A stretch of DNA of 64,000 nt. Source: Octopus sinensis. Its lineage: Eukaryota. Of the stretch, positions 3,570 through 61,942 are shown piece by piece. How positions within the stretch are numbered: position 1 is the stretch's first letter; every line of letters begins with the position of its first letter. The notes under the pieces are model-generated. The model was given only the letters and a program-made list of their open reading frames with translations. It made no database searches and had not been told where the DNA came from. The position numbers and the translations under genes were made by a program. The stretch covers positions 5,583 through 69,582 of the forward strand of contig NW_021834018.1 in assembly GCF_006345805.1 (NCBI RefSeq). The letters run 5' to 3'.

Positions 3570-3631
3570 TTGCTGTTGTTTTGTTGTTGTCGATGTTATT
3601 ATTATTATTGTTACTACTACTACTATACTAT

Positions 3632-3704
<73 letters not shown>

Positions 3705-3711
3705 GCTGCTG

Positions 3712-3749
<38 letters not shown>

Positions 3750-3756
3750 GCTACTA

Positions 3757-3791
<35 letters not shown>

Positions 3792-3893
3792 ACTACTACT
3801 ACTACTGCTGCTGCTACAATTACTACTACTACTACTGCTGCTGCTGCTACAATTACTACTACTACTACTGCTGCTGCTGCTGTTGCTTGCTGC

Positions 3894-3926
<33 letters not shown>

Positions 3927-3979
3927 AGTTACTACTACTGCTTCTACCACCACCACTACTACTACTTCTACTACTGCTG

Positions 3980-4050
<71 letters not shown>

Positions 4051-4090
4051 GCTGCTGCTTCTGCTGCTACTACCACTACTACTACTGACA
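3570..4090. repeat. Compound trinucleotide microsatellite (CTA/CTG/CCA)n
   Basis: Directly visible; explains the poly-S/T/Y/L/V ORFs at 3564-4227. Confidence 0.95.
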
Positions 4091-7550: not shown

Positions 7551-8222
7551 CATACATATACACCGGATTAAATTTATATATCACATATGCGTATATCATG
7601 TGATCACTACTCAACTAGACTACCGGATTTTTTTATGCAACACTAGCCACAATGCCGACCATACGAGCAGAGCATTATTGCCCTGACTGGAAAGATTTAC
7701 CCGTATACAGCCGAGTGGATTGGAGCAATATGAAATGAAATGTTTTACTAAAAGAAGACATGTATCTCGGTCTCGGAATCGATCCTACACTCTAGCGACC
7801 GTGAGTGCAGTACACTCACCACTAGTCCACGGTGAAATTATCCTGGTGTTATGAATCATATACTCTCGTTTCAAGTTCAGAATAACTTGTGTAGGACGAT
7901 TATATAAACGTTTCCTTATATCGTAAGAGCAGTTGGTAGATAGCAATAACAACACGAAAATGTTTTAACATTTTTCTGTGCCCAGGTCAACTCATGCACT
8001 AAAAATGCGGATGAAACAATAGCATTTGACATCGGTTAGTGAGCCAAATGTCAGTACAAACAAGTAGTAGTAGTAGTAGCAGTGGTGGTGGTGGTTGCAG
8101 TAGTAGAAGTAGTAAGTTAAACAGATAACGTAATGATATCGAAAATGTCTTTTAATTTTTTGTGTAACATGAGAGTGCAATATGATGTATATCGAAAGGA
8201 ATGTAAATACATACGTACATAC

Positions 8223-8306
<84 letters not shown>

Positions 8307-8543: not shown

Positions 8544-8929
8544 GTGGAGGCGCAATGGCCCAGTGGTTAGGGCAGCGGACTCGCGGTCATAGGATCGCGG
8601 TTTCGATTCCCAGACCGGGCGTTGTGAGTGTTTATTGAGCGAAAACACCTAAAAGCTCCACGAGGCTCCGGCAGGGGATGGTGGTGATCCCTGCTTTACT
8701 CTTTCACCACAACTTTCTCTCACTCTTACTTCCTGTTTCTGGTGTACCTGTATTTCAAGGGGTCGGCCTTGTCACTCTCTGTGTCACGCTGAATATCCCC
8801 GAGAACTGCGTTAAGGGTACACGTGTCTGTGGAGTGCTCAGCCACTTACACGTTAATTTCACGAGCAGGCTGTTCCGTTGATTCGGATCAACCGGAACCC
8901 TCATCGTCGTAACCGACGGAGTGCTTCCA
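8544..8929 (+). mobile_element. Family C SINE, full length, (TCCA)n tail
   Basis: GTGGAGGCGCAATGGCCCAGTGGTTAGGG tRNA-like head, B-box-like GTTTCGATTCC, 3' end CGTCGTAACCGACGGAGTGCTTCCA; near-identical copies at 57164 and 61560. Confidence 0.92.
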
Positions 8930-23494: not shown

Positions 23495-23793
23495 GTAGCA
23501 CTCCGTCGGTTACGACGATGACGAACTTTCCAGCTGATACATGAAATTAAAGTGCAAGTGGCTGAGCACTCCACAGACACTTGTACCCTTAACGTACTTC
23601 TCAGGGAAGGTTCAGCGTGACACAGAGTGTGACAAGGCTGTCCCTTTTAATTACAGCTACTACTCATTTTCGGCAGCTGAGTGAACTGGAGCAACGTGAA
23701 ATAAAGTGTCTTGCTCAAGGACACAACGCGTCACTGAACTCACGACCTTACAATCGTGAGCCGAATGCTCTCACCACTTAGCCACGTGCCTTC
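23495..23793 (-). mobile_element. Chimeric SINE: family D head/core with family C tail
   Basis: Minus strand starts GAAGGCACGTGGCTAAGTGG...TTTATTTCACGTTGCTCCAGTTCACTCAGCTG (D) and continues CCTTGTCACACTCTGTGTCACGCTGAA...CGTCGTAACCGACGGAGTGC (C). Confidence 0.8.
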
Positions 23794-25597: not shown

Positions 25598-26355
25598 CTA
25601 GGTTTCATCCGGTACTAAGAGACAACTACAACCAGGGTTGATCCGTTACTGAATGACAACTATTACTAGGCTTGATTCGTTACTAAATGACGAATATTAC
25701 CAGGTTTGATCCGTTACTACATGACAACTATTCTCAGGTTTGATCCAGTACTAAATGACGACTTTTCCCAGGTTTGATCTGGTACTACATGACAACTATT
25801 ACCAGAGTCGATCCGGTACTAAATGGCAACTATTCCCAGGTTTGATCTGGTACTAAATAACAACTATTACCAGGCTTGATCCGTTACTAAATGACGAATA
25901 TTACCAGGTTTGATCCGTTACTAAATATCAACTATTCCCAGGTTTGATCCGGTACTAAATGGCAACTATTACCAGAGTTGATCCGGTACTAAATGGCAAC
26001 TATTCCCAGGTTTGATCCGGTACTAAATAACAACTATTACCAGGTTTGAGCCGGTACTAAATAACAACTATTACCAGAGTTGATCCGGTACTAAATAACA
26101 ACTATTACCAGGTTTGAGCCGGTACTAAATAACAACTATTACCAGAGTTGATCCGGTACTAAATGGCAACTATTCCCAGGTTTGATCCGGTACTAAATAA
26201 CAACTATTACCAGGTTTGAGCCGGTACTAAATGAGAGCTATTACCAGGTTTGATCCGTTACTACATGATAACTATTCCCAGGTACTAAATGACAAATATT
26301 ACCAGGTTTCATCCGTTGCTAAATGACATCTTATAACCGGGTTTGATCCATTATT
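25598..26355. repeat. 34-bp minisatellite, about 22 units
   Basis: Consensus TTACCAGGTTTGATCCGGTACTAAATGACAACTA repeated head to tail without spacers. Confidence 0.95.
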
Positions 26356-34289: not shown

Positions 34290-35022
34290 TATCATACGAG
34301 CTCATTAAGATTGGTAATAGGATATTCACATTCAACTCAAGAATTCAGCTACATGAAATTACATGCTTTCTCTTAGAGATCTTATGGATAAAGTATTTCC
34401 TAATTCATCTGTCAATTACTCTGATATAAACTGACTATGTGAATGAGCTATACTGGACCCAACTAATGAAATAGCTGATAAACTAAATCATGAGCTTGTT
34501 CAAAAGTTAACAGACAAATCGGAAGTGTTTTTCGATCAATTGACAATAGTTGATCAAGATCATGTTGTTCAATACCCTGTTGAATTTCTGAACACACTTA
34601 AGCCCTCTGGCATGCCATTGCATAACTTGTCACTAAAACTGGGCGCTCCCATTATGTTGCTTAGGAATCTTGAGCCATCTCAAATATGTAATGGAATTTG
34701 TTTAATTAAAACCTCATGTCCTACTGGCAACAATCATAACAGGTAGTCACAAAGGAGAAAATGACTTTATTCCAAATATTCCTCTCATACCTACAGATGT
34801 TGCATTTGAATATAAGTGGCTTCAGCTTCCAGTCAAACTAACTTTTGGTATTTCATTTAAGAAATCTCAGGGTGCATCCCTCGAGGGAGTTGGACATGCT
34901 TCTCCCATGGTCAGTTCTATGTTGTTTGCTCGCGACTTGGAAGCGGCAACAATCTATTCATTTCGACACCAACAAAAAATTACACAATGAATATTGTTAA
35001 CCCTGAAGGGCTTCAACATTGA
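34290..35022 (+). mobile_element. Helitron RepHel fragment: PIF1-type helicase C-terminus, pseudogenised
   Basis: Frames give KVFPN...AILDPTNEIADKLN...YPVEFLNTLKPSGMPLHNLSLKLGAPIMLLRNLEPSQICNG...IITGSHKGE..FIPNIPLIP...QLPVKLTFGISFKKSQGASLEGVG...SHGQFYVVCSR; contains frameshifts and stops. Confidence 0.92.
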
Positions 35023-41325: not shown

Positions 41326-41399
<74 letters not shown>

Positions 41400-41411
<12 letters not shown>

Positions 41412-42740
41412 TATATATATACATATGTATATATCATTCGCCATGATAGATCGCTAGCCGCTACACATTCTATACTTCCTCTCCTTGTTTCTTTCGGTGT
41501 TCCTTCCTGTGGAAGAGCGTAGGCTCGAAACGTTAAAGACTGTTTCACCTCCCGAGCGTTATACATCTGTTTGTTGTCTACACCACCTGTCTTCGACTTT
41601 TGTTTATTTGCGAATTCTTCCTATACACACACACATATATATATATATATACACACACATATATATATATATGTGTGTTTGTGCGTTTGTATTCCGGAAT
41701 ATGAGTGTATGCACTCGTGTCTTTGTGCGTGCGTGTATTTGTGGTCATGCACTCAGAGATATTGTACATGCGTATGTGTGTATATATATACATTTATACA
41801 TATATAACCATCTAAAATGTATATCTGTATGTATGTATATATATGTGTGTATGCATGTATATATATATGTATATGTATGTGTTTGTATGCATGTATGTCT
41901 GTATGAATACACTGTCCTATGTTCGAACTAGTTTACTGTTACCTTGTATATAACACGTATGTATGTAGAAAGGAGAAAAACAAATATATAAAATGGCACC
42001 CCGTTCCCCCCTTATCTTCCAATAAACAAATTTATTAAACTGAGCCTCTATTGTTGTCCTTCTTGTTTCTGTTGTTGCTATTGTTGTTGCTGTATATTTT
42101 ATTTTTCTCTTTATCCATTTATTTATTTATTTGTTTTATTTTATTTATTTATCTTTTTTTTCCTATGAATGTTTCTTCTGTTTAAAGATATAAAGTAGTG
42201 AAACAAGAACAAGAACAAGATGAACAACAACGATAATAGCAGGATCAGCAACATATAAAGAGGCATAAAGGAAGAAAGAAAACAAGATTTTTAAAATTTG
42301 AATAAAGGAAGAAAAGAACGATTATCTTGAATATACGATGAAAATGATAGTTAAATAGCTGAATAAGAAAGAAGATGTAGAGAAAGAAAAAGAAGGAAAA
42401 AAATAGATGTGATTGTTTGAGTTGTTTTAATGCATTCTTTCCCATTATCTATGTGTTTTGTTGCTTTTTGTCTTTTTTGTATAAGAACTGTTGCTAATCA
42501 GACATGACGGCTACCCCGTGTGTATTTTGTACACTCTGAAATTCCATATACTGTAAAACATAAAACAGAATTAACAAAAAATACTGTCGTCTTTGTCTAT
42601 TGTAAAGGCAGGGTTATGACGTCCTGTTCAGAAATAAAGACGATAAGTAGTGCAATTACTTGAAATGAATAATGAAACAAAACAGACAAACCCTGAACAT
42701 ATATATAAATATATATATATATATATTATATATATACATA
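41400..42740. repeat. Tandem duplication, copy 1 (~1341 bp)
   Basis: Near identical to 42741-44062; the same 66-aa minus ORF appears at 42245 and 43586 (offset 1341). Confidence 0.95.
41434..41625 (+). mobile_element. Family H repeat (Penelope-like tail), also duplicated at 42778-42970
   Basis: GAAGAGCGTAGGCTCGAAACGT motif with downstream CCCGAGCG...TGTTTGTTGT...; related copies at 56865-57060 (+) and 60060-60170 (-). Confidence 0.7.
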
Positions 42741-44062
42741 TATATATATATAATATATATATATACATATGTATATATCATTCGCCATGATAGATCGCTA
42801 GCCGCTACACATTCTATACTTCCTCTCCTTGTTTCTTTCGGTGTTCCTTCCTGTGGAAGAGCGTAGGCTCGAAACGTTAAAGACTGTTTCACCTCCCGAG
42901 CGTTATACATCTGTTTGTTGTCTACACCACCTGTTTTTGACTTTTGTTTATTTGCGAATTCTTCCTATACACACACACACATATATATATACATATACAC
43001 ACACATATATATATATATGTGTGTTTGTGCGTTTGTATTCCGGAATATGAGTGTATGCACTCGTGTCTTTGTGCGTGTATTTGTGGTCATGCACTCAGAG
43101 ATATTGTACATGCGTATGTGTGTATATATATACATTTATACATATATAACCATCTAAAATGTATATCTGTATGTATGTATATATATGTGTGTATGCATGT
43201 ATATATATATGTATATGTATGTGTTTGTATGCATGTATGTCTGTATGAATACACTGTCCTATGTTCGAACTAGTTTACTGTTACCTTGTATATAACACGT
43301 ATGTATGTAGAAAGGAAAAAACAAATATATAAAATGGCACCCCGTTCCCCCCTTATCTTCCAATAAACAAATTTATTAAACTGAGCCTCTATTGTTGTCC
43401 TTCTTGTTTCTGTTGTTGCTATTGTTGTTGCTGTATATTTTATTTTTCTCTTTATCCATTTATTTATTTATTTGTTTTATTTTATTTATTTATCTTTTTT
43501 TTCCTATGAATGTTTCTTCTGTTTAAAGATATAAAGTAGTGAAACAAGAACAAGAACAAGATGAACAACAACGATAATAGCAGGATCAGCAACATATAAA
43601 GAGGCATAAAGGAAGAAAGAAAACAAGATTTTTAAAATTTGAATAAAGGAAGAAAAGAACGATTATCTTGAATATACGATGAAAATGATAGTTAAATAGC
43701 TGAATAAGAAAGAAGATGTAGAGAAAGAAAAAGAAGGAAAAAAATAGATGTGATTGTTTGAGTTGTTTTAATGCATTCTTTCCCATTATCTATGTGTTTT
43801 GTTGCTTTTTGTCTTTTTTGTATAAGAACTGTTGCTAATCAGACATGACGGCTACCCCGTGTGTATTTTGTACACTCTGAAATTCCATATACTGTAAAAC
43901 ATAAAACAGAATTAACAAAAAATACTGTCGTCTTTGTCTATTGTAAAGGCAGGGTTATGACGTCCTGTTCAGAAATAAAGACGATAAGTAGTGCAATTAC
44001 TTGAAATGAATAATGAAACAAAACAGACAAACCCTGAACATATATAAATATATATATATATA
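42741..44062. repeat. Tandem duplication, copy 2
   Basis: As copy 1; differs by a few substitutions and microsatellite-length changes; boundaries fall in (TA)n tracts and are approximate. Confidence 0.95.
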
Positions 44063-45691: not shown

Positions 45692-46025
45692 TGGAAGCAC
45701 TCCGTCGGTTACGACGACGAGGGTTCCGGTTGATCCGAATCAACGGAACAGCCTGCTCGTGAAATTAACGTGTAAGTGGCTGAGCACTCCACAGACACGT
45801 GTAGCCTAAACTTAGTTCTCGGGGATATTCAGCGTGACACAGAGAGTGACAAGGCCGGCCCTTTGAAATACAGGTACAACAGAAACAGGAAGTAAGAGTG
45901 AGAGAAAGTTGTGGTGAAAGAGTACAGCAGGGATCACCACCATACCCTGCCGGAGCCTCGTGGAGCTTTAGGTGTTTTCGCTCAATAAACACTCACAACG
46001 CCCGGTCTGGGAATCGAAACCGCGA
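45692..46025 (-). mobile_element. Family C SINE, 5' truncated
   Basis: Near identical to the reverse complement of 8590-8929. Confidence 0.9.
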
Positions 46026-46569
46026 TTAAGATTTATAACGAATCTATGTTAGACATCGGCGCCTCATCAATAATTCTTCTACTTTTTTTGATAAGATAAT
46101 GGATCGACTTACATCGTAAAACAGACAAAGAATTTTCTATTATTATCCTTGTACTTGTCTGAGTACTAGGGCACTTAACGGGTTAAGTCGAACAAATCGA
46201 CCCAGATAGTACTTGTTTTTAAATTCGATATCTATTCTATCAGCCGCATTTGGCGAACTGCTAAGGTCGTAAACAATCAAGCACAGGTTGTCAAGCGGAA
46301 CTAAACTCAGGTTGTCACGTAAAACTAAAAATACAGAAGCAAAGTAAGCAACTGGAGTGGGTTGAAATCAAAACGAAAAAAAAATGCCGAATCAAATGCT
46401 GCAGAGCTTCTAGTCCGTAACTTTTAAAGTTCAATGTAATCTACTATCATGGATTGGTAGTTTTTTATCGATCAGGAAAGGATGAAACACAAAACTGACT
46501 TGGACTAAGTAACTCCTTAGAAATAACGCAAGACATTGTATGCGATACTTGAATGACTTAGCAAATTTG

Positions 46570-46592: not shown

Positions 46593-46636
<44 letters not shown>

Positions 46637-46999
46637 CACTACTACCATTACTACTACTACTACTACTACTACAACCACTACCACAAATACTACTACTACT
46701 ACTGCTGCTGCTACTACTACTATTACTACAACTACTACTACTACTACTACTGCTACTACTGCTGATGCTACTACTACTACTACTACTACTACTGCTGCTA
46801 CTGCTGCTACTACTACTACTACCTCAACTACAGTAGTAGTAGTAGTAGTAGTAGTAGCAGCAGCATTAGTAATACTACTAGTAGTAGTAGCAGCAACAAT
46901 ACTACGAAGCAATAGTAGCAATAACAATAGCAGTGGAAACGGCAGTTGCAGCAGCAGCAGCAGTATTATTATTATTATTACTATTATTATTATTATTAT

Positions 47000-47030
<31 letters not shown>

Positions 47031-47105
47031 TGTGTTGCTGGTGGTGGTGGTGGTGGTGGTGGTAGTAGTAGTAGTGGGAGTAGTAGTAGTAGTAGTAGTA
47101 GTAGT
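46570..47105. repeat. Compound trinucleotide microsatellite, (CCA/CTA)n then (GTA/GTG)n
   Basis: Directly visible. Confidence 0.95.
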
Positions 47106-49314: not shown

Positions 49315-49395
<81 letters not shown>

Positions 49396-49484
49396 GTATG
49401 TATGTATGTATATTTATATATATATATATACATATACACACAAACACATACACACACACATATATATACATGTATATATATATG

Positions 49485-52060: not shown

Positions 52061-52355
52061 GTGGAGGCACATGGCCTAGTGGTTAGAGAAGCGGACTCGC
52101 GGTCGAGGGATCGCGGGTTCGAATCTCAGACCAAGTGATGTGCGTGTTTATGAGCGAAACACCTAAGCTCCAGGTGGTTCAGGCAGAAGGTAATGGCGAA
52201 CTTCTGCTGACTCTTTCGCCACAACTTTCTCTCACTCTTTCCTCCTGCGTCTTGTAGCTCACCTGCGATGGACCGGCGTCCCGTCCAGGTGGGAAACCTA
52301 TATGCCAAGGAAACCGGGAAACCAGCCTTTATCAGCCAGGCATGGCCCGAGAAGG
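52061..52355 (+). mobile_element. SINE with family C-like tRNA head but a different body
   Basis: GTGGAGGCACATGGCCTAGTGGTTAG...GGGTTCGAATC head; body CTGCGATGGACCGGCGTCCCGTCCAGG resembles the V-SINE core as I recall it (unverified). Confidence 0.75.
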
Positions 52356-52864: not shown

Positions 52865-53236
52865 GCACTCCGTCGGTTAGGATGTCGAGGGTTCCAGGTG
52901 ATCCGATCAACGGAACAGCCTGCTCGTGAAATTGACGTGCAAGTTGCTGAGCACTCCACAGACATGTGTACCCTTAACGTAGTTCTCGGGGAGATTCAGC
53001 GTGACTTAGAGTGTGACAAGGTTGACTCTTTCATATACAGGTACAACAGGAAACATAAAGAAAGAGTGAGAGATAGTTGTGGTAAAATAGTACAGCAGGG
53101 TTCGCCACCACAAACCCTGCCGGACGGAGCCTCATGGAGCTTTAAGAGTGCTTTCGCTCAATAAACACTCACAACGCTCGGTCTGGGAATCCTACGACCG
53201 CAAGCCCGCTGTCCTAACCACTGGGCCATTGCGCTT
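52865..53236 (-). mobile_element. Family C SINE, diverged full length
   Basis: Reverse complement of the C consensus from head to GGAGTGC tail. Confidence 0.85.
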
Positions 53237-55160: not shown

Positions 55161-55710
55161 TAAAAATTCTTGGAAGAGGTGCCCCAGCATGGCCACTGAA
55201 ACAAATAAAATGACAAAAGATAAAAGATATGGTGTTGTCGACACCGGGAAGCTGGAAATGTTAAAACCAGAGTCCAGAGGTTAAGAAAAGGTTTTAAAAT
55301 CGCATCATCCACTTACGTGAAACTTGGGTACAATTGGATTGTCAAACTCACGTTGCACCGCGGTAAAGACAAGGCACAGCGTTAAACTTACGCTGACTTC
55401 TGGTATGTTTATGTTCGTTGCCTGCTTTGTATTTTTCGGCTATAATTTAAGATTTTCATATACAACTCGAGCGATTTGAGAAATTTTATCGTCAAACTGG
55501 AAAAAAACATTGCAAGACAGATAGAACAACGAGGCTGTATATTAAAACATACACATACACATACACACACACGTACACGCACACTCACACACTCATATAC
55601 ATATACATATATCGATATATAATTAGGCCAACACGTCGCAGCCTTTGAGCTAAAACGCATAAAAGCATAAAAAGGAACTTATCTCTCTCTCCCCCTCTCT
55701 CTCTCTATAA

Positions 55711-55750
<40 letters not shown>

Positions 55751-55751
<1 letters not shown>

Positions 55752-56127
55752 GATAAATATCAAAGTGAGTTATATACAGTAGCGGTAACACATCGTGACG
55801 TATATTTGCCATTTCAATATGGCTACCCCTAAGGGTGGATGCTACTGTAGATTTTAGCCCCAGGAGGACACACTCCTCCAGCTGGCCATAGACACACTTT
55901 CTGTGTCCTGTCAGTATTTGCAAAGGGAAGTCATCCTTCCCGTCTTCAACTTATGATACACACGGACTCGAGTTTCGAGGTATTGACCTCTCGTCAGCGT
56001 GTGACAATCATAGTTGTCGCCGAGAATTAGATTTCCTTCACAAATACTTATACTTTTTCCAGCGTCCACTGTCGCTGATATTGAAAAAGTGAAATCAAAC
56101 AATGATAAATATCAAAGTGAGTTATAT
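55751..56127 (-). mobile_element. Retrozyme-like unit, copy A (352 nt plus ~25-nt terminal redundancy)
   Basis: TGATAAATATCAAAGTGAGTTATATA at both 55751 and 56103; reverse complement about 99% identical to copies B and C; contains an HHR. Confidence 0.88.
55959..56003 (-). ncRNA. Type I hammerhead ribozyme, copy A
   Basis: CACACG-CTGACGA-GAGG(TCAATA)CCTC-GAAA-CTCGAG-TC-CGTGTG on the minus strand. Confidence 0.92.
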
Positions 56128-56151
56128 AACTCACTTTGATATTATAACTAA

Positions 56152-56503
56152 CTGTATATAACTCACTTTGATATTTATCATTGTTTGATTTCACTTTTTC
56201 AATATCAGCGACAGTGGACGCTGGAAAAAGTATAAGTATTTGTGAAGGAAATCTAATTCTCGGCGACAACTATGATTGTCACACGCTGACGAGAGGTCAA
56301 TACCTCGAAACTCGAGTCCGTGTGTATCATAAGTTGAAGACGGGAAGGATGACTTCCCTTTGCAAATACTGACAGGACACAGAAATTGTGTCTATGGCCA
56401 GCTGGAGGAGTGTGTCCTCCTGGGGCTAAAAACTACAGTAGCATCCACCCTTAGGGGTAGCCATATTGAAATGGCAAATATACGTCACGATGTGTTACCG
56501 CTA
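56152..56503 (+). mobile_element. Retrozyme-like unit, copy B (352 nt)
   Basis: Exact 352-nt period with copy C (identical ORF-track entries at 56181 and 56533). Confidence 0.9.
56280..56324 (+). ncRNA. Type I hammerhead ribozyme, copy B; predicted cleavage after C56318
   Basis: Stem I CACACG/CGTGTG, core CUGACGA and GAAA, stem II GAGG/CCUC, palindromic stem III ACUCGAGU, GUC triplet. Confidence 0.93.
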
Positions 56504-56843
56504 CTGTATATAACTCACTTTGATATTTATCATTGTTTGATTTCACTTTTTCAATATCAGCGACAGTGGACGCTGGAAAAAGTGTAAGTATTTGTGAAGG
56601 AAATCTAATTCTCGGCGACAACTATGATTGTCACACGCTGACGAGAGGTCAATACCTCGAAACTCGAGTCCGTGTGTATCATAAGTTGAAGACGGGAAGG
56701 ATGACTTCCCTTTGCAAATACTGACAGGACACAGAGAGTGTGTCTATGGCCAGCTGGAGGAGTGTGTCCTCCTGGGGCTAAAAACTACAGTAGCATCCAC
56801 CCTTAGGGGTAGCCATATTGAAATGGCAAATATACGTCACGAT
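56504..56843 (+). mobile_element. Retrozyme-like unit, copy C (slightly truncated, ends in (AT)n)
   Basis: Tandem repeat of copy B with two or three substitutions. Confidence 0.9.
56632..56676 (+). ncRNA. Type I hammerhead ribozyme, copy C; predicted cleavage after C56670
   Basis: Identical motif to copy B, 352 nt downstream. Confidence 0.93.
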
Positions 56844-56864
56844 ATATATATATATATATATATA

Positions 56865-57060
56865 TTCGCCAAGCTGGAACGCTGAAATCTAAAAGGATTT
56901 TTTCATTCTCTCTCTGTTTATTTTCACTTATTCCATTCTGCCGAAGAGCGTAGGCTCGAAACGTAAAAGACTTCTTCATTTTCTCAAGCGTCAGAATAAT
57001 ACACTTGTTTGTTGTTTACACATCTACCTTTGTCCTTTCTTTTCCTATAACTATCAACTA
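56865..57060 (+). mobile_element. Family H repeat (Penelope-like tail)
   Basis: CTGCCGAAGAGCGTAGGCTCGAAACGTAAAAGAC; homologous to 41434-41625. Confidence 0.7.
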
Positions 57061-57163: not shown

Positions 57164-57548
57164 GTGGAGGCGCAATGGCCCAGTGGTTAGGGCAGCGGAC
57201 TCGCGGTCATAGGATCGCAGTTTCGATTTCCAGACCGGGCGTTGTGAGTGTTTATTGAGCGAAAACACCTAAAGCCCCACGAGGCTCCGGCAGGGGTTGG
57301 TGGTGATCCCTGCTGTACTCTTTCACCACAACTTTCTCTCACTCTTACTTCCTGTTTCTGTTGTACCTGTATTTCAAGGGGCCGGCCTGGTCACTCTCTG
57401 TGTCACGCTGAATATCCCCGAGAATTACGTTAAGGTTACACGTGTCTATGGAGTGCTCAGTCACTTACACGTTAATTTCACGAACAGGCTGTTCCGTTGA
57501 TTTGGGATCAACCGGAATTCTCGTCGTCGTAACCGACGCAGTGCTTCC
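57164..57548 (+). mobile_element. Family C SINE, full length
   Basis: Near identical to 8544-8929. Confidence 0.92.
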
Positions 57549-61559: not shown

Positions 61560-61942
61560 TGGAAGCACTCCGTCGGTTACGACGATGAGGGTTCTCGTTG
61601 ATCCGAATCAACGGAACAGCCTACTCGTGAAATTCACGTGTAAGTGGCTGAGCACTCCACAGACACGTGTATCCTTAACGTAGTTCTCGGGGATATTCAG
61701 CGTGACACAGAGAGTGACAAGACCGGCCCTTTGAAGTAGAGGTACAACAGAAACAGGAAGTAAGAGTGAAAGAAAGTCGTGGTGAAAGAGTACAGCAGGA
61801 ATCACCACCATCCCCTGCCGGAGCCTCGTGGAGCTTTAGGTGTTTTCGCTCAATAAATACTCACAACGCCCGGTAGTTGAATCGAAACCGCGATTCTATG
61901 ACCGCGAGTCCGCTGCCCTAACCACTAGGCCATTGCGCCCCC
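61560..61942 (-). mobile_element. Family C SINE, full length
   Basis: Reverse complement of the C consensus. Confidence 0.92.

What the first reader, a model, noticed from the sequence alone, without database searches (positions are those of the whole stretch)
55751..56843. Young hammerhead-ribozyme repeat: candidate octopus non-LTR retrozyme producing a 352-nt circular RNA
Seen: a non-coding 352-nt unit occurs three times at about 99% identity, and each copy has a complete type I hammerhead (CACACG-CTGACGA-GAGG/TCAATA/CCTC-GAAA-CTCGAG-TC-CGTGTG). The plus-strand tandem copies place GUC sites at 56318 and 56670, so read-through transcription would excise an exact monomer (56319-56670). Known: metazoan non-LTR retrozymes are short tandem units with type I hammerheads that give abundant circular RNAs and encode no protein. 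Inference: this is an active or recently active family of that kind, which I cannot match to a named element.
Basis: partly seen in the sequence, partly recalled or inferred. Interest (0 to 1): 0.93.

Follow-up and report, generated by a model that had tools for sequence, protein, structure and literature searches.

The report
Young hammerhead retrozyme insertion in (TA)n
This is a real, young copy of a known kind of small non-coding mobile element (an animal "retrozyme" carrying a self-cutting hammerhead RNA), and the shape of its insertion suggests that a Penelope-like retrotransposon's enzymes put it there.

Summary
A 352-nt non-coding unit is present as 3.05 unit-equivalents at about 99.6% identity. 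An explicit hammerhead descriptor finds only these three in 64 kb and none in 300 shuffles. Rfam Hammerhead_1 scores 32.2 bits, just under its cut-off of 34.

Every sequence-testable feature of metazoan non-LTR retrozymes is met: unit size, 42.6% GC, no ORF, and a strongly self-paired circle (z = -7).

A 380-nt inverted, 5'-truncated copy lies head-to-head with 1.97 tandem units. Both outward-facing 3' ends abut one split (TA)n run, and they are offset by 43 nt in monomer coordinates. This matches published Penelope-like-element insertion signatures.

Two qualifications follow. Helix III is an 8-nt palindrome, so the ribozyme probably cleaves as a dimer. A transcript entering from the left would bury hammerhead #1 in a 380-bp hairpin.

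Host identity, copy number, cleavage and circRNA could not be tested. Verdict: a new member of a known kind, of moderate interest.

The parts
55706..55748 (.). Left half of the (TA)n target microsatellite
   Evidence: TRF finds period 2 at 55706-55749. The perfect (TA)18 run is 55714-55749. The junction is ambiguous by 1-2 nt.
55749..56128 (-). Inverted, 5'-truncated retrozyme copy. On the minus strand it reads monomer 189-352 then 1-216 (380 nt, 1.08 units). Its 3' end abuts the left (TA)n.
   Evidence: BLAST of the monomer. Inverted repeat I1, 380 nt, 99% complementary to 56155-56534.
55749..55791 (-). Candidate PLE-type 'tail': monomer 174-216 (43 nt). It is present at the 3' end of the inverted copy and absent from the 3' end of the direct copies.
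   Evidence: Coordinates. Compared with the 30-40 bp tail, read as two RT start sites, in PMC8557442 and PMC11167929. This is a single locus, so it is only suggestive.
55959..56003 (-). Type I hammerhead of the inverted copy. It cleaves 3' of C at 55965 on the minus strand.
   Evidence: Rfam RF00163, 32.2 bits. Descriptor hit.
56125..56175 (.). 5'-to-5' junction. It contains a 14-nt palindrome GAGTTATATAACTC and about 3 stuttered copies of TATAACTCACTTTGATAT. The non-repeat spacer is 56129-56150.
   Evidence: TRF finds period 18, 3.1 copies. Sequence. Interpreted as microhomology or template-switch joining (inference).
56151..56318 (+). Direct partial unit A (monomer 185-352), ending at the first plus-strand cleavage site
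56280..56324 (+). Type I hammerhead #1, with C17 at 56318. Helix I is CACACG/CGUGUG. The core is CUGACGA...GAAA. Helix II is GAGG/CCUC with loop UCAAUA. Helix III is A:U and C:G plus the UCGA loop, within the 8-nt palindrome ACUCGAGU.
56319..56670 (+). Complete 352-nt monomer between two cleavage sites, the predicted circRNA sequence
   Evidence: Circular MFE is -117.6 kcal/mol, z = -7.0, 63% paired, and the longest ATG ORF is 38 aa.
56632..56676 (+). Type I hammerhead #2, with C17 at 56670
56671..56843 (+). Direct partial unit C (monomer 1-173). Its 3' end lies in a small AC-rich hairpin (AUACGU-CACG-AUGUGU) and abuts the right (TA)n.
56844..56866 (.). Right half of the (TA)n target microsatellite
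   Evidence: Perfect (TA)11 at 56843-56864. Sequence.

Best explanation
The locus is one young insertion of a non-autonomous, non-coding retroelement of the metazoan 'non-LTR retrozyme' kind. Its unit is 352 nt and carries one type I hammerhead.

How it most likely works:
1. A multimeric plus-strand transcript is cut at the two GUC sites. The ribozyme probably acts as a double hammerhead, in which the palindromic ACUCGAGU segments of two ribozymes pair to give a stable 8-bp helix III.
2. The 352-nt monomer, with a 5'-OH and a 2',3'-cyclic phosphate, is closed into a compact circRNA by a host RtcB-type ligase.
3. Multimeric or circular RNA is copied back into DNA by the RT/GIY-YIG protein of an autonomous Penelope-like element (PLE).

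The insertion at this locus looks like the product of that enzyme. A (TA)n run was cut, and both DNA ends primed reverse transcription at two internal RNA sites 43 nt apart (monomer 173 and 216). The two cDNAs ran through the cleavage/ligation junction once and twice respectively. They were joined 5'-to-5' at a TATATA palindrome with some template-switch stutter.

Shown from sequence: the hammerheads, the unit, the lack of an ORF, the strong fold, the architecture, the (TA)n flanks, and the fact that the template had 352-nt periodicity across the cleavage site. A cleaved linear monomer therefore cannot have been the template.

Inferred: cleavage, circularisation, the PLE partner, priming on both strands, and the host.

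Sub-confidences: retrozyme class about 0.85; PLE-type integration on both strands about 0.55.
For: Hammerhead: the match is full length to RF00163 and all core positions are conserved. Loop 2 (UCAAUA) agrees with the consensus CAAAUA at 5 of 6 positions. The descriptor gives 3 hits in the real window against 0 in 300 shuffles.

Class features as defined in PMC7229834: tandem unit of 150-450 bp (here 352); GC below 45-50% (here 42.6%, against 35.4% for the window); no ORF; highly self-paired circle (z = -7.0 for plus and -6.2 for minus, with 0 of 200 shuffles as stable).

Dimer: the MFE of two 45-mers is a double hammerhead with all three helices, at -33.9 against -29.0 kcal/mol for two separate monomers. 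The GAAACUCGAGUC self-duplex is -12.1. Dimer-dependent cleavage is published for the amphibian retrozymes, whose short helix III makes them weak as single motifs.

PLE-type insertion: Craig et al. describe partial tandems, an adjacent inverted 5'-truncated copy, a 30-40 bp tail at one end, and a (TA)n bias that hides target-site duplications. [quoted passage not shown] This locus shows all of these.

Only 3.1% of the window lies in perfect (TA)>=8 runs. The link between retrozymes and PLEs is argued independently in bioRxiv 10.64898/2026.07.22.740005.
Against: - This is one locus only. No second copy could be retrieved, so recurrent termini, copy number and target preference are untested.
- The Rfam score is 1.8 bits below the gathering cut-off.
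- The 43-nt offset is slightly longer than the published 30-40 bp tail. A random end would fall within 45 nt of the other about a quarter of the time.
- The window contains no PLE RT or GIY-YIG sequence.
- If the host is a cephalopod, the (TA)n-targeting Naiad PLEs are reported as long-dead remnants there, so another active partner would be needed.
- All RNA statements rest on thermodynamic prediction.
- This particular locus may be a poor circRNA source, because hammerhead #1 is predicted to be buried in the hairpin in a read-through transcript.
Confidence: 0.7

Rival explanations
1. DNA-level rearrangement of a hammerhead-bearing repeat. A single direct copy, inserted or inherited, was tandemly duplicated by slippage or unequal exchange. 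Its 5' part was then duplicated in inverted orientation by fold-back or microhomology-mediated template switching of a DNA polymerase at a fragile (TA)n site. Priming of reverse transcription on both strands plays no part.
For: The junction shows stutter and microhomology (TATAACTCACTTTGATAT about 3 times), which a DNA polymerase can also produce. The window is full of unstable microsatellites and has another 1.34-kb tandem duplication. Li and Pollet propose local amplification and unequal crossover for retrozyme arrays.
Against: The direct array ends at non-integer unit boundaries that abut (TA)n on both sides. The inverted copy's outer end also lands exactly on (TA)n and 43 nt from the other 3' end, as the PLE model predicts. 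Unequal exchange would not by itself explain an insertion inside a single (TA)n run.
Confidence: 0.15
2. It is the truncated end (pseudo-LTR) of an autonomous Penelope-like element rather than a separate non-autonomous family.
For: PLE pLTRs carry type I hammerheads, and most PLE insertions are heavily 5'-truncated.
Against: The copied template repeats every 352 nt across three cleavage-site crossings with no coding sequence in between. An autonomous PLE tandem would repeat every 3 kb or more. The hammerhead also has a 6-bp helix I with an internal loop and a consensus-like loop 2, unlike the 'minimal' PLE variants described in PMC7229834.
Confidence: 0.07
3. Assembly artefact: the inverted and tandem copies were created or miscounted by the assembler, for example through a chimeric or fold-back long read or a collapsed or expanded repeat.
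For: Craig et al. warn that tandem/inverted PLE structures cause assembly problems. No reads are available here.
Against: The arms are asymmetric (380 against 693 nt). The flanks beyond the (TA)n runs are unique and are not reverse complements of each other. The copies differ at 4 singleton sites. The structure is also what PLE biology predicts.
Confidence: 0.05
4. Endogenised copy of an infectious viroid-like or deltavirus-like circular RNA.
For: Small size, a hammerhead, and a compact fold.
Against: A ribozyme is found in one polarity only. There is no ORF. The hammerhead pattern has no match in 2.9 million viral contigs. The DNA tandem/inverted architecture in (TA)n is that of a retroelement.
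Confidence: 0.02

Closest known systems
Metazoan non-LTR retrozymes (Cervera & de la Pena 2020, PMC7229834), especially the ~350-390 bp Mytilus galloprovincialis repeats
   Same: One type I hammerhead per unit, short tandem units, low GC, no ORF, LTR, PBS or PPT, and a monomer predicted to fold into a compact, self-paired circle. The unit length of 352 nt is in the same range.
   Different: There is no detectable sequence similarity available to test. Only 1.97 direct units are present here, plus an inverted copy. Expression, cleavage, circularity and copy number are untested. No cephalopod member was found in the searchable literature.
Newt/axolotl satellite-2 retrozymes (HHR_Amex1/Amex2; 330 and 350 nt)
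   Same: Unit size, and a short helix III capped by a palindromic tetraloop. Dimeric constructs cleave much better than monomers in those species. Here the predicted two-molecule MFE is a double hammerhead.
   Different: Helix III here has 2 bp (A:U, C:G) plus UCGA, embedded in a full 8-nt palindrome, which is closer to the 'invertebrate-like' 2-bp form. The host appears to be an invertebrate. The amphibian families have around 10^5 copies, while copy number here is unknown.
Penelope-like elements (Penelope/Poseidon, Neptune, Naiad, Hydra) and their insertion signature (PMC8557442, PMC11167929)
   Same: Partial tandem, an adjacent inverted 5'-truncated copy, a short extension at one end only, an AT-rich/(TA)n target with no discernible target-site duplication, and a type I hammerhead in the repeated non-coding part.
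   Different: There is no RT/GIY-YIG ORF, and the period is 352 nt rather than 3 kb or more. The hammerhead is canonical-looking, not the minimal PLE variant. The offset between the two 3' ends is 43 nt rather than 30-40 nt.
Plant LTR retrozymes (PMC4918200)
   Same: Non-autonomous, hammerhead-processed, with a circRNA intermediate.
   Different: Those have type III hammerheads inside LTRs, PBS/PPT, 4-bp TSDs, GC above 55% and 600-1000 nt circles. None of that applies here.
Unnamed hammerhead family in JGI metagenome Ga0126336 / Ga0099820 (loci L001-L016)
   Same: Identical GAAACUCGAGUC helix III palindrome and the CUGAUGAG core.
   Different: Different helices I and II, no similarity to the 352-nt body, one hammerhead per contig, and no Rfam hit at E<=0.01. 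The source organism is unknown.

Membership tests
Hammerhead ribozyme, type I (Rfam RF00163) | Conserved catalytic core (C3 U4 G5 A6 N7 G8 A9 ... G12 A13 A14 ... H17) at a three-helix junction with helix I open | tested here: met
   CUGACGA / GAAA / GUC are all present. Helix I has 6 bp, helix II 4 bp, and helix III has A:U and C:G. The alignment to the model is full length. The descriptor finds 3 hits against 0 in 300 shuffles.
Hammerhead ribozyme, type I (Rfam RF00163) | Score at or above Rfam's curated gathering threshold (34 bits) | tested here: not met
   The score is 32.2 bits, so there is no hit in gathering mode. E = 4.2e-4 per site at window scale. This is a curation cut-off, not a structural feature. 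The shortfall comes from divergent helix I and II sequence.
Hammerhead ribozyme, type I (Rfam RF00163) | Mg2+-dependent self-cleavage 3' of H17 | not testable with these tools
   Needs in vitro transcription. In silico the single-molecule hammerhead fold is not the MFE (-7.8 against -14.5), whereas the dimer MFE is a double hammerhead.
Metazoan non-LTR retrozyme (PMC7229834) | Type I hammerhead in every repeat unit | tested here: met
   All three copies of the hammerhead region are intact and identical.
Metazoan non-LTR retrozyme (PMC7229834) | Short tandem repeats, 150-450 bp per unit, dimers to multimers | tested here: met
   The period is 352 nt with 1.97 direct units, plus 1.08 inverted units.
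Metazoan non-LTR retrozyme (PMC7229834) | Low GC (<45-50%), with no LTR/PBS/PPT and no coding capacity | tested here: met
   GC is 42.6%. The longest ATG ORF is 38 aa and the longest stop-free stretch is 84 aa. Neither has a relative among 5.8 billion proteins. No terminal direct repeats other than the unit itself were found.
Metazoan non-LTR retrozyme (PMC7229834) | Monomer RNA highly self-paired | tested here: met
   Circular MFE is -117.6 kcal/mol against -82.7 +/- 5.0 for shuffles, z = -7.0.
Metazoan non-LTR retrozyme (PMC7229834) | Multi-copy dispersed family in the host genome | not testable with these tools
   No eukaryotic genome collection is available. There is no other copy in the window and no copies of this family in the metagenome or viral scans.
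Metazoan non-LTR retrozyme (PMC7229834) | Expressed as linear and circular monomeric RNA | not testable with these tools
   No RNA data are available. Spurious-ORF searches aimed at transcriptome assemblies found nothing.
PLE-type insertion (PMC8557442, PMC11167929) | Partial tandem with an adjacent inverted 5'-truncated copy at the 5' end | tested here: met
PLE-type insertion (PMC8557442, PMC11167929) | AT-rich / (TA)n target, with target-site duplication not discernible | tested here: met
   (TA)18 on the left and (TA)11 on the right. The background fraction of perfect (TA)>=8 runs is 3.1%.
PLE-type insertion (PMC8557442, PMC11167929) | 30-40 bp 'tail' at one end only, reflecting two internal RT start sites | tested here: inconclusive
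   The two 3' ends are at monomer 173 and 216, a 43-nt offset present only on the inverted copy. This is one locus, slightly over the published range, and the chance expectation is about 0.26.
Autonomous Penelope-like element | ORF with telomerase-like RT and GIY-YIG endonuclease | tested here: not met
   There is no such ORF in the element or anywhere in the 64 kb. The element is therefore non-autonomous at best.
Plant LTR retrozyme | Type III hammerheads within LTRs, PBS/PPT, 4-bp TSD | tested here: not met
   The topology is type I, with no LTRs.
Viroid-like / deltavirus-like circular RNA replicon | Self-cleaving ribozymes in both polarities (or an encoded antigen ORF) | tested here: not met
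   A ribozyme is present in one polarity only, there is no ORF, and there are 0 viral contig matches.
miRNA families hit on the hairpin (MIR7533, MIR4208 and others) | Score at or above the family gathering threshold | tested here: not met
   108.8 against 230 bits, 71.7 against 140, and so on. These are generic long-hairpin matches on both strands.

The most novel reading that the evidence does not exclude
This single young locus preserves the full footprint of a retrozyme integration. A (TA)n run was cut, reverse transcription was primed on both DNA ends at two internal RNA sites 43 nt apart, copying ran around a circular or multimeric 352-nt template, and the cDNAs were joined 5'-to-5' at a palindrome. 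If so, it would be direct structural evidence that invertebrate retrozymes are mobilised by PLE enzymes. That link has so far been argued from co-occurrence and from pLTR phylogeny in vertebrates. It would also be the first described retrozyme family in a cephalopod, if the host is one, and would imply a recently active PLE partner other than the extinct Naiads. As a by-product, the 380-bp perfect hairpin could feed siRNA or piRNA silencing of its own family.
Probability: 0.35. Interest if true: 0.55.

Novelty: new member of a known kind. Interest (0 to 1): 0.35.

Why it matters
Retrozymes are a hammerhead-ribozyme route to abundant circRNAs in animals that is separate from back-splicing. How they are copied back into DNA is still open; the 2026 preprint explicitly lists mobilisation as future work.

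A very young insertion whose ends, junction and target are all still readable is a useful specimen. It rules out a cleaved linear monomer as the template. It also shows the same inverted-plus-tandem, (TA)n-targeted, offset-end footprint as autonomous Penelope-like elements.

If a genome-wide census confirms this, the locus gives a concrete, testable model for retrozyme mobilisation and extends the family to a new lineage. On present evidence it is not a new kind of element.

Tried and rejected
1. Rfam in gathering mode returned nothing. The hammerheads appear only with E-value thresholds.
2. Strong Rfam 'miRNA' hits on 56032-56251 (MIR7533 and others) were rejected. They hit both strands, score far below the gathering cut-offs, and are generic hairpin matches. 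Dozens of mir-297/mir-3149 hits elsewhere are microsatellite artefacts.
3. Other copies and transcripts were sought through spurious ORFs, first with the 84-aa stop-free stretch and then with all nine other stretches concatenated. No homologue was found.
4. The metagenome scan with the family-specific hammerhead pattern returned 16 contigs, all from a different family with no similarity to the monomer body. Rfam did not call them at E<=0.01, and no PLE ORF lies beside them. The viral contig scan gave 0 matches.
5. Host identification failed by every route. The Helitron-type Pif1 fragment gave only ~50% identical hits, with arachnid names. Two window ORFs are not on record as called genes. SINE and hammerhead strings do not appear in the searchable literature.
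6. A PLE partner was sought in the window. No RT or GIY-YIG sequence was found among ORFs of 120 aa or more, or among non-low-complexity stop-free stretches.
7. The bacterial/archaeal genome collection and the phage, plasmid and E. coli collections were not searched, because they are irrelevant to a eukaryotic repeat.
Full report
**1. What is in the sequence**

Tandem Repeats Finder reports a 352-nt period, 2.0 copies and 99% matches at 56151-56843. I defined the monomer as the stretch between the two plus-strand cleavage sites (56319-56670) and compared it with the window by BLAST. This accounts for 1,073 nt of repeat.
- Plus strand, 56151-56843: monomer positions 185-352, 1-352 and 1-173 (693 nt, 1.97 units).
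- Minus strand, 56128 down to 55749: monomer positions 189-352 then 1-216 (380 nt, 1.08 units).

The repeat finder sees the same thing as a 380-nt inverted repeat, 99% complementary, with arms 26 nt apart. Only four of the 352 alignment columns vary (monomer 66, 68, 114, 266), each in a single copy. The window contains no other copy. The correction is that the 'third copy' is inverted and head-to-head with the tandem pair.

**2. The hammerheads are real**

Rfam's default thresholds return nothing. With E-value thresholds, RF00163 (Hammerhead_1) matches full length at 56280-56324(+), 56632-56676(+) and 55959-56003(-). Each scores 32.2 bits against a gathering score of 34, with E = 9e-6 on 1.4 kb and 4.2e-4 on the whole window.

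The alignment shows the following:
- CUGACGA, GAAA and GUC are intact.
- Helix I has 6 bp (CACACG/CGUGUG).
- Helix II has 4 bp (GAGG/CCUC), with loop UCAAUA against the consensus CAAAUA.
- Helix III has A:U and C:G closing a UCGA loop.

As an independent test I wrote an explicit type I descriptor. It finds exactly these three sites in the 64 kb and none in 300 dinucleotide-preserving shuffles. No ribozyme is detected in the opposite polarity.

**3. Properties of the unit**

- GC is 42.6%, against 35.4% for the window.
- The longest ATG ORF over a multimer is 38 aa and the longest stop-free stretch is 84 aa.
- None of the stop-free stretches has any relative among 5.8 billion proteins.
- Folded as a circle, the plus RNA has an MFE of -117.6 kcal/mol against -82.7 +/- 5.0 for shuffles (z = -7.0). 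The minus RNA gives z = -6.2.

These are the sequence-level hallmarks that Cervera & de la Pena (PMC7229834) give for metazoan non-LTR retrozymes. They list type I hammerheads in 150-450 bp tandem units of GC below 45-50%, no LTR/PBS/PPT, no coding capacity, and small, highly self-paired circRNAs of ~170-400 nt.

**4. How the ribozyme probably works**

Helix III sits inside a perfect 8-nt palindrome, ACUCGAGU.
- Taken alone, the 45-mer prefers a non-hammerhead fold (-14.5 kcal/mol) over the canonical hammerhead (-7.8).
- The minimum-energy structure of two molecules is a double hammerhead, with helices I and II formed and an 8-bp intermolecular helix III. Its energy is -33.9 against -29.0 for two separate monomers. 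The same holds for 81-mers with the extended helix I.

This is the behaviour published for newt and axolotl retrozymes. There, a short helix III (capped by a palindromic tetraloop in HHR_Amex1) gives poor cleavage in monomeric constructs and efficient cleavage in dimeric ones. I therefore infer that cleavage here depends on multimeric transcripts. This is prediction, not measurement.

**5. The insertion architecture points to Penelope-like-element (PLE) machinery**

The element sits inside one (TA)n run, with (TA)18 on the left and (TA)11 on the right. Perfect (TA)>=8 runs cover only 3.1% of the window. Both outward-facing ends are 3' ends of the element:
- The direct copies end at monomer 173 (...ACGTCACGAT|ATAT).
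- The inverted copy ends at monomer 216 (...TTTATCATT|ATAT), 43 nt further along the monomer.

The 5' ends meet head-to-head at monomer 185-191, at a TATATA palindrome, with about three stuttered copies of TATAACTCACTTTGATAT.

Craig et al. [quoted passage not shown]

Frangieh et al. (PMC11167929) show biochemically that a PLE protein does the following:
- It cuts AT-rich DNA.
- It starts reverse transcription at two adjacent internal RNA sites whose spacing corresponds to the tail.

Here the monomer-173 end lies in a small AC-rich hairpin, AUACGU-CACG-AUGUGU.

The sequence itself shows that the cDNA crossed the cleavage/ligation junction once in the inverted copy and twice in the direct copies. 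The template therefore had 352-nt periodicity. It was an uncleaved multimer or a circle copied by rolling-circle reverse transcription, not a cleaved linear monomer and not an autonomous PLE with a period of 3 kb or more.

The rest of the mechanism is inference from one locus. A DNA-level fold-back could produce the same inverted copy. The 43-nt offset is only weak evidence, with a chance expectation of about 0.26.

**6. A qualification on circRNA output from this locus**

If a transcript enters from the left, it contains the antisense copy first. In the MFE of the 1,095-nt transcript, all 45 nt of hammerhead #1 pair with the antisense arm and only hammerhead #2 stays locally folded. The 786-nt hairpin has an MFE of -723.7 kcal/mol. 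Excision of the exact monomer therefore requires initiation to the right of the inverted arm, for example from an internal promoter of the kind proposed for PLE pLTRs. Otherwise the locus is more likely to yield long dsRNA.

**7. What could not be established**

- The host is unverified. The window is 35% GC, dense in microsatellites, and holds eight copies of a tRNA-derived SINE. From my own recollection this fits octopus genomes, but no tool could test it.
- The only related hammerheads retrievable were 16 contigs from two JGI metagenomes. They share the GAAACUCGAGUC helix III but nothing else.
- I found no open paper describing cephalopod hammerheads or retrozymes.
- Craig et al. state that Naiad PLEs in cephalopods are ancient remnants. 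A young insertion there would therefore imply another active partner.

**8. Age**

There are four singleton differences in 1,073 nt (0.37%). This implies a recent event if all copies were made from one template. Alternatively, some of the differences may come from a heterogeneous multimeric template or from RT errors. Two of the four are A-to-G in the plus sense, which is too few to interpret.

**9. Verdict**

This is a genuine, well-preserved, young insertion of a hammerhead retrozyme, and a new member of a known kind. Interest is moderate (0.35). A genome-wide census of insertion termini is the decisive next computation.

Noticed in passing
window 34447-34743 (+): A stop-free 99-aa stretch matches Pfam PF21530 (Pif1 helicase 2B domain, E = 2.9e-15). 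It is probably a Helitron-type helicase remnant. The nearest database proteins are only ~50% identical, and those that carry a name are from arachnids.
   Followed up: partly
window 57164-57480 (+); also 8544-8861, 45760-46026, 61628-61942, 52927-53234, 2752-2927, 52061-52247, 23542-23663: Eight copies or fragments of a ~320-nt SINE with a tRNA-like head, 80-96% identical to one another. ARAGORN calls none of them a tRNA. One copy lies 320 nt to the right of the retrozyme.
   Followed up: partly
window 41354-42700 and 42699-44041: A 1.34-kb segment is tandemly duplicated at 98.9% identity (TRF rows are mirrored). This shows recent DNA-level duplication in the same window.
   Followed up: no
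window 25600-26349: A 34-bp minisatellite (AGGTTTGATCCGGTACTAAATGACAACTATTACC) is present in 22 copies at 81% matches. Its origin is unknown.
   Followed up: no
L001-L016 (JGI metagenomes Ga0126336, Ga0099820): A separate hammerhead family (CUGAUGAG-GGUUCACUGAAGAACC-GAAACUCGAGUC, helix I AGCAA/UUGCU) has the same palindromic helix III, with one copy per contig and two alternative upstream contexts. The source organism is unknown. L008 also carries DIRS-like RNase H and recombinase fragments. Rfam does not call these at E<=0.01.
   Followed up: partly
window 56384/56736, 56232/56584 (monomer 66 and 266): Two of the four differences between copies are A-to-G in the plus sense. Copying from an ADAR-edited RNA would produce this, but the number is far too small to conclude anything.
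   Followed up: no
window-wide, e.g. 8207-8288, 49395-49465, 46699-46948: More than 150 sub-threshold Rfam 'miRNA/sRNA' matches (mir-297, mir-3149, mir-1277, isrG) fall on CA/TA/trinucleotide microsatellites. All are far below their gathering scores and appear to be compositional artefacts.
   Followed up: yes
window 3612-4086 and 46602-47105: Very long trinucleotide arrays, (TAC)158 and (ACT)74 followed by (AGT)91, create the longest 'ORFs' in the window. They are not genes.
   Followed up: yes
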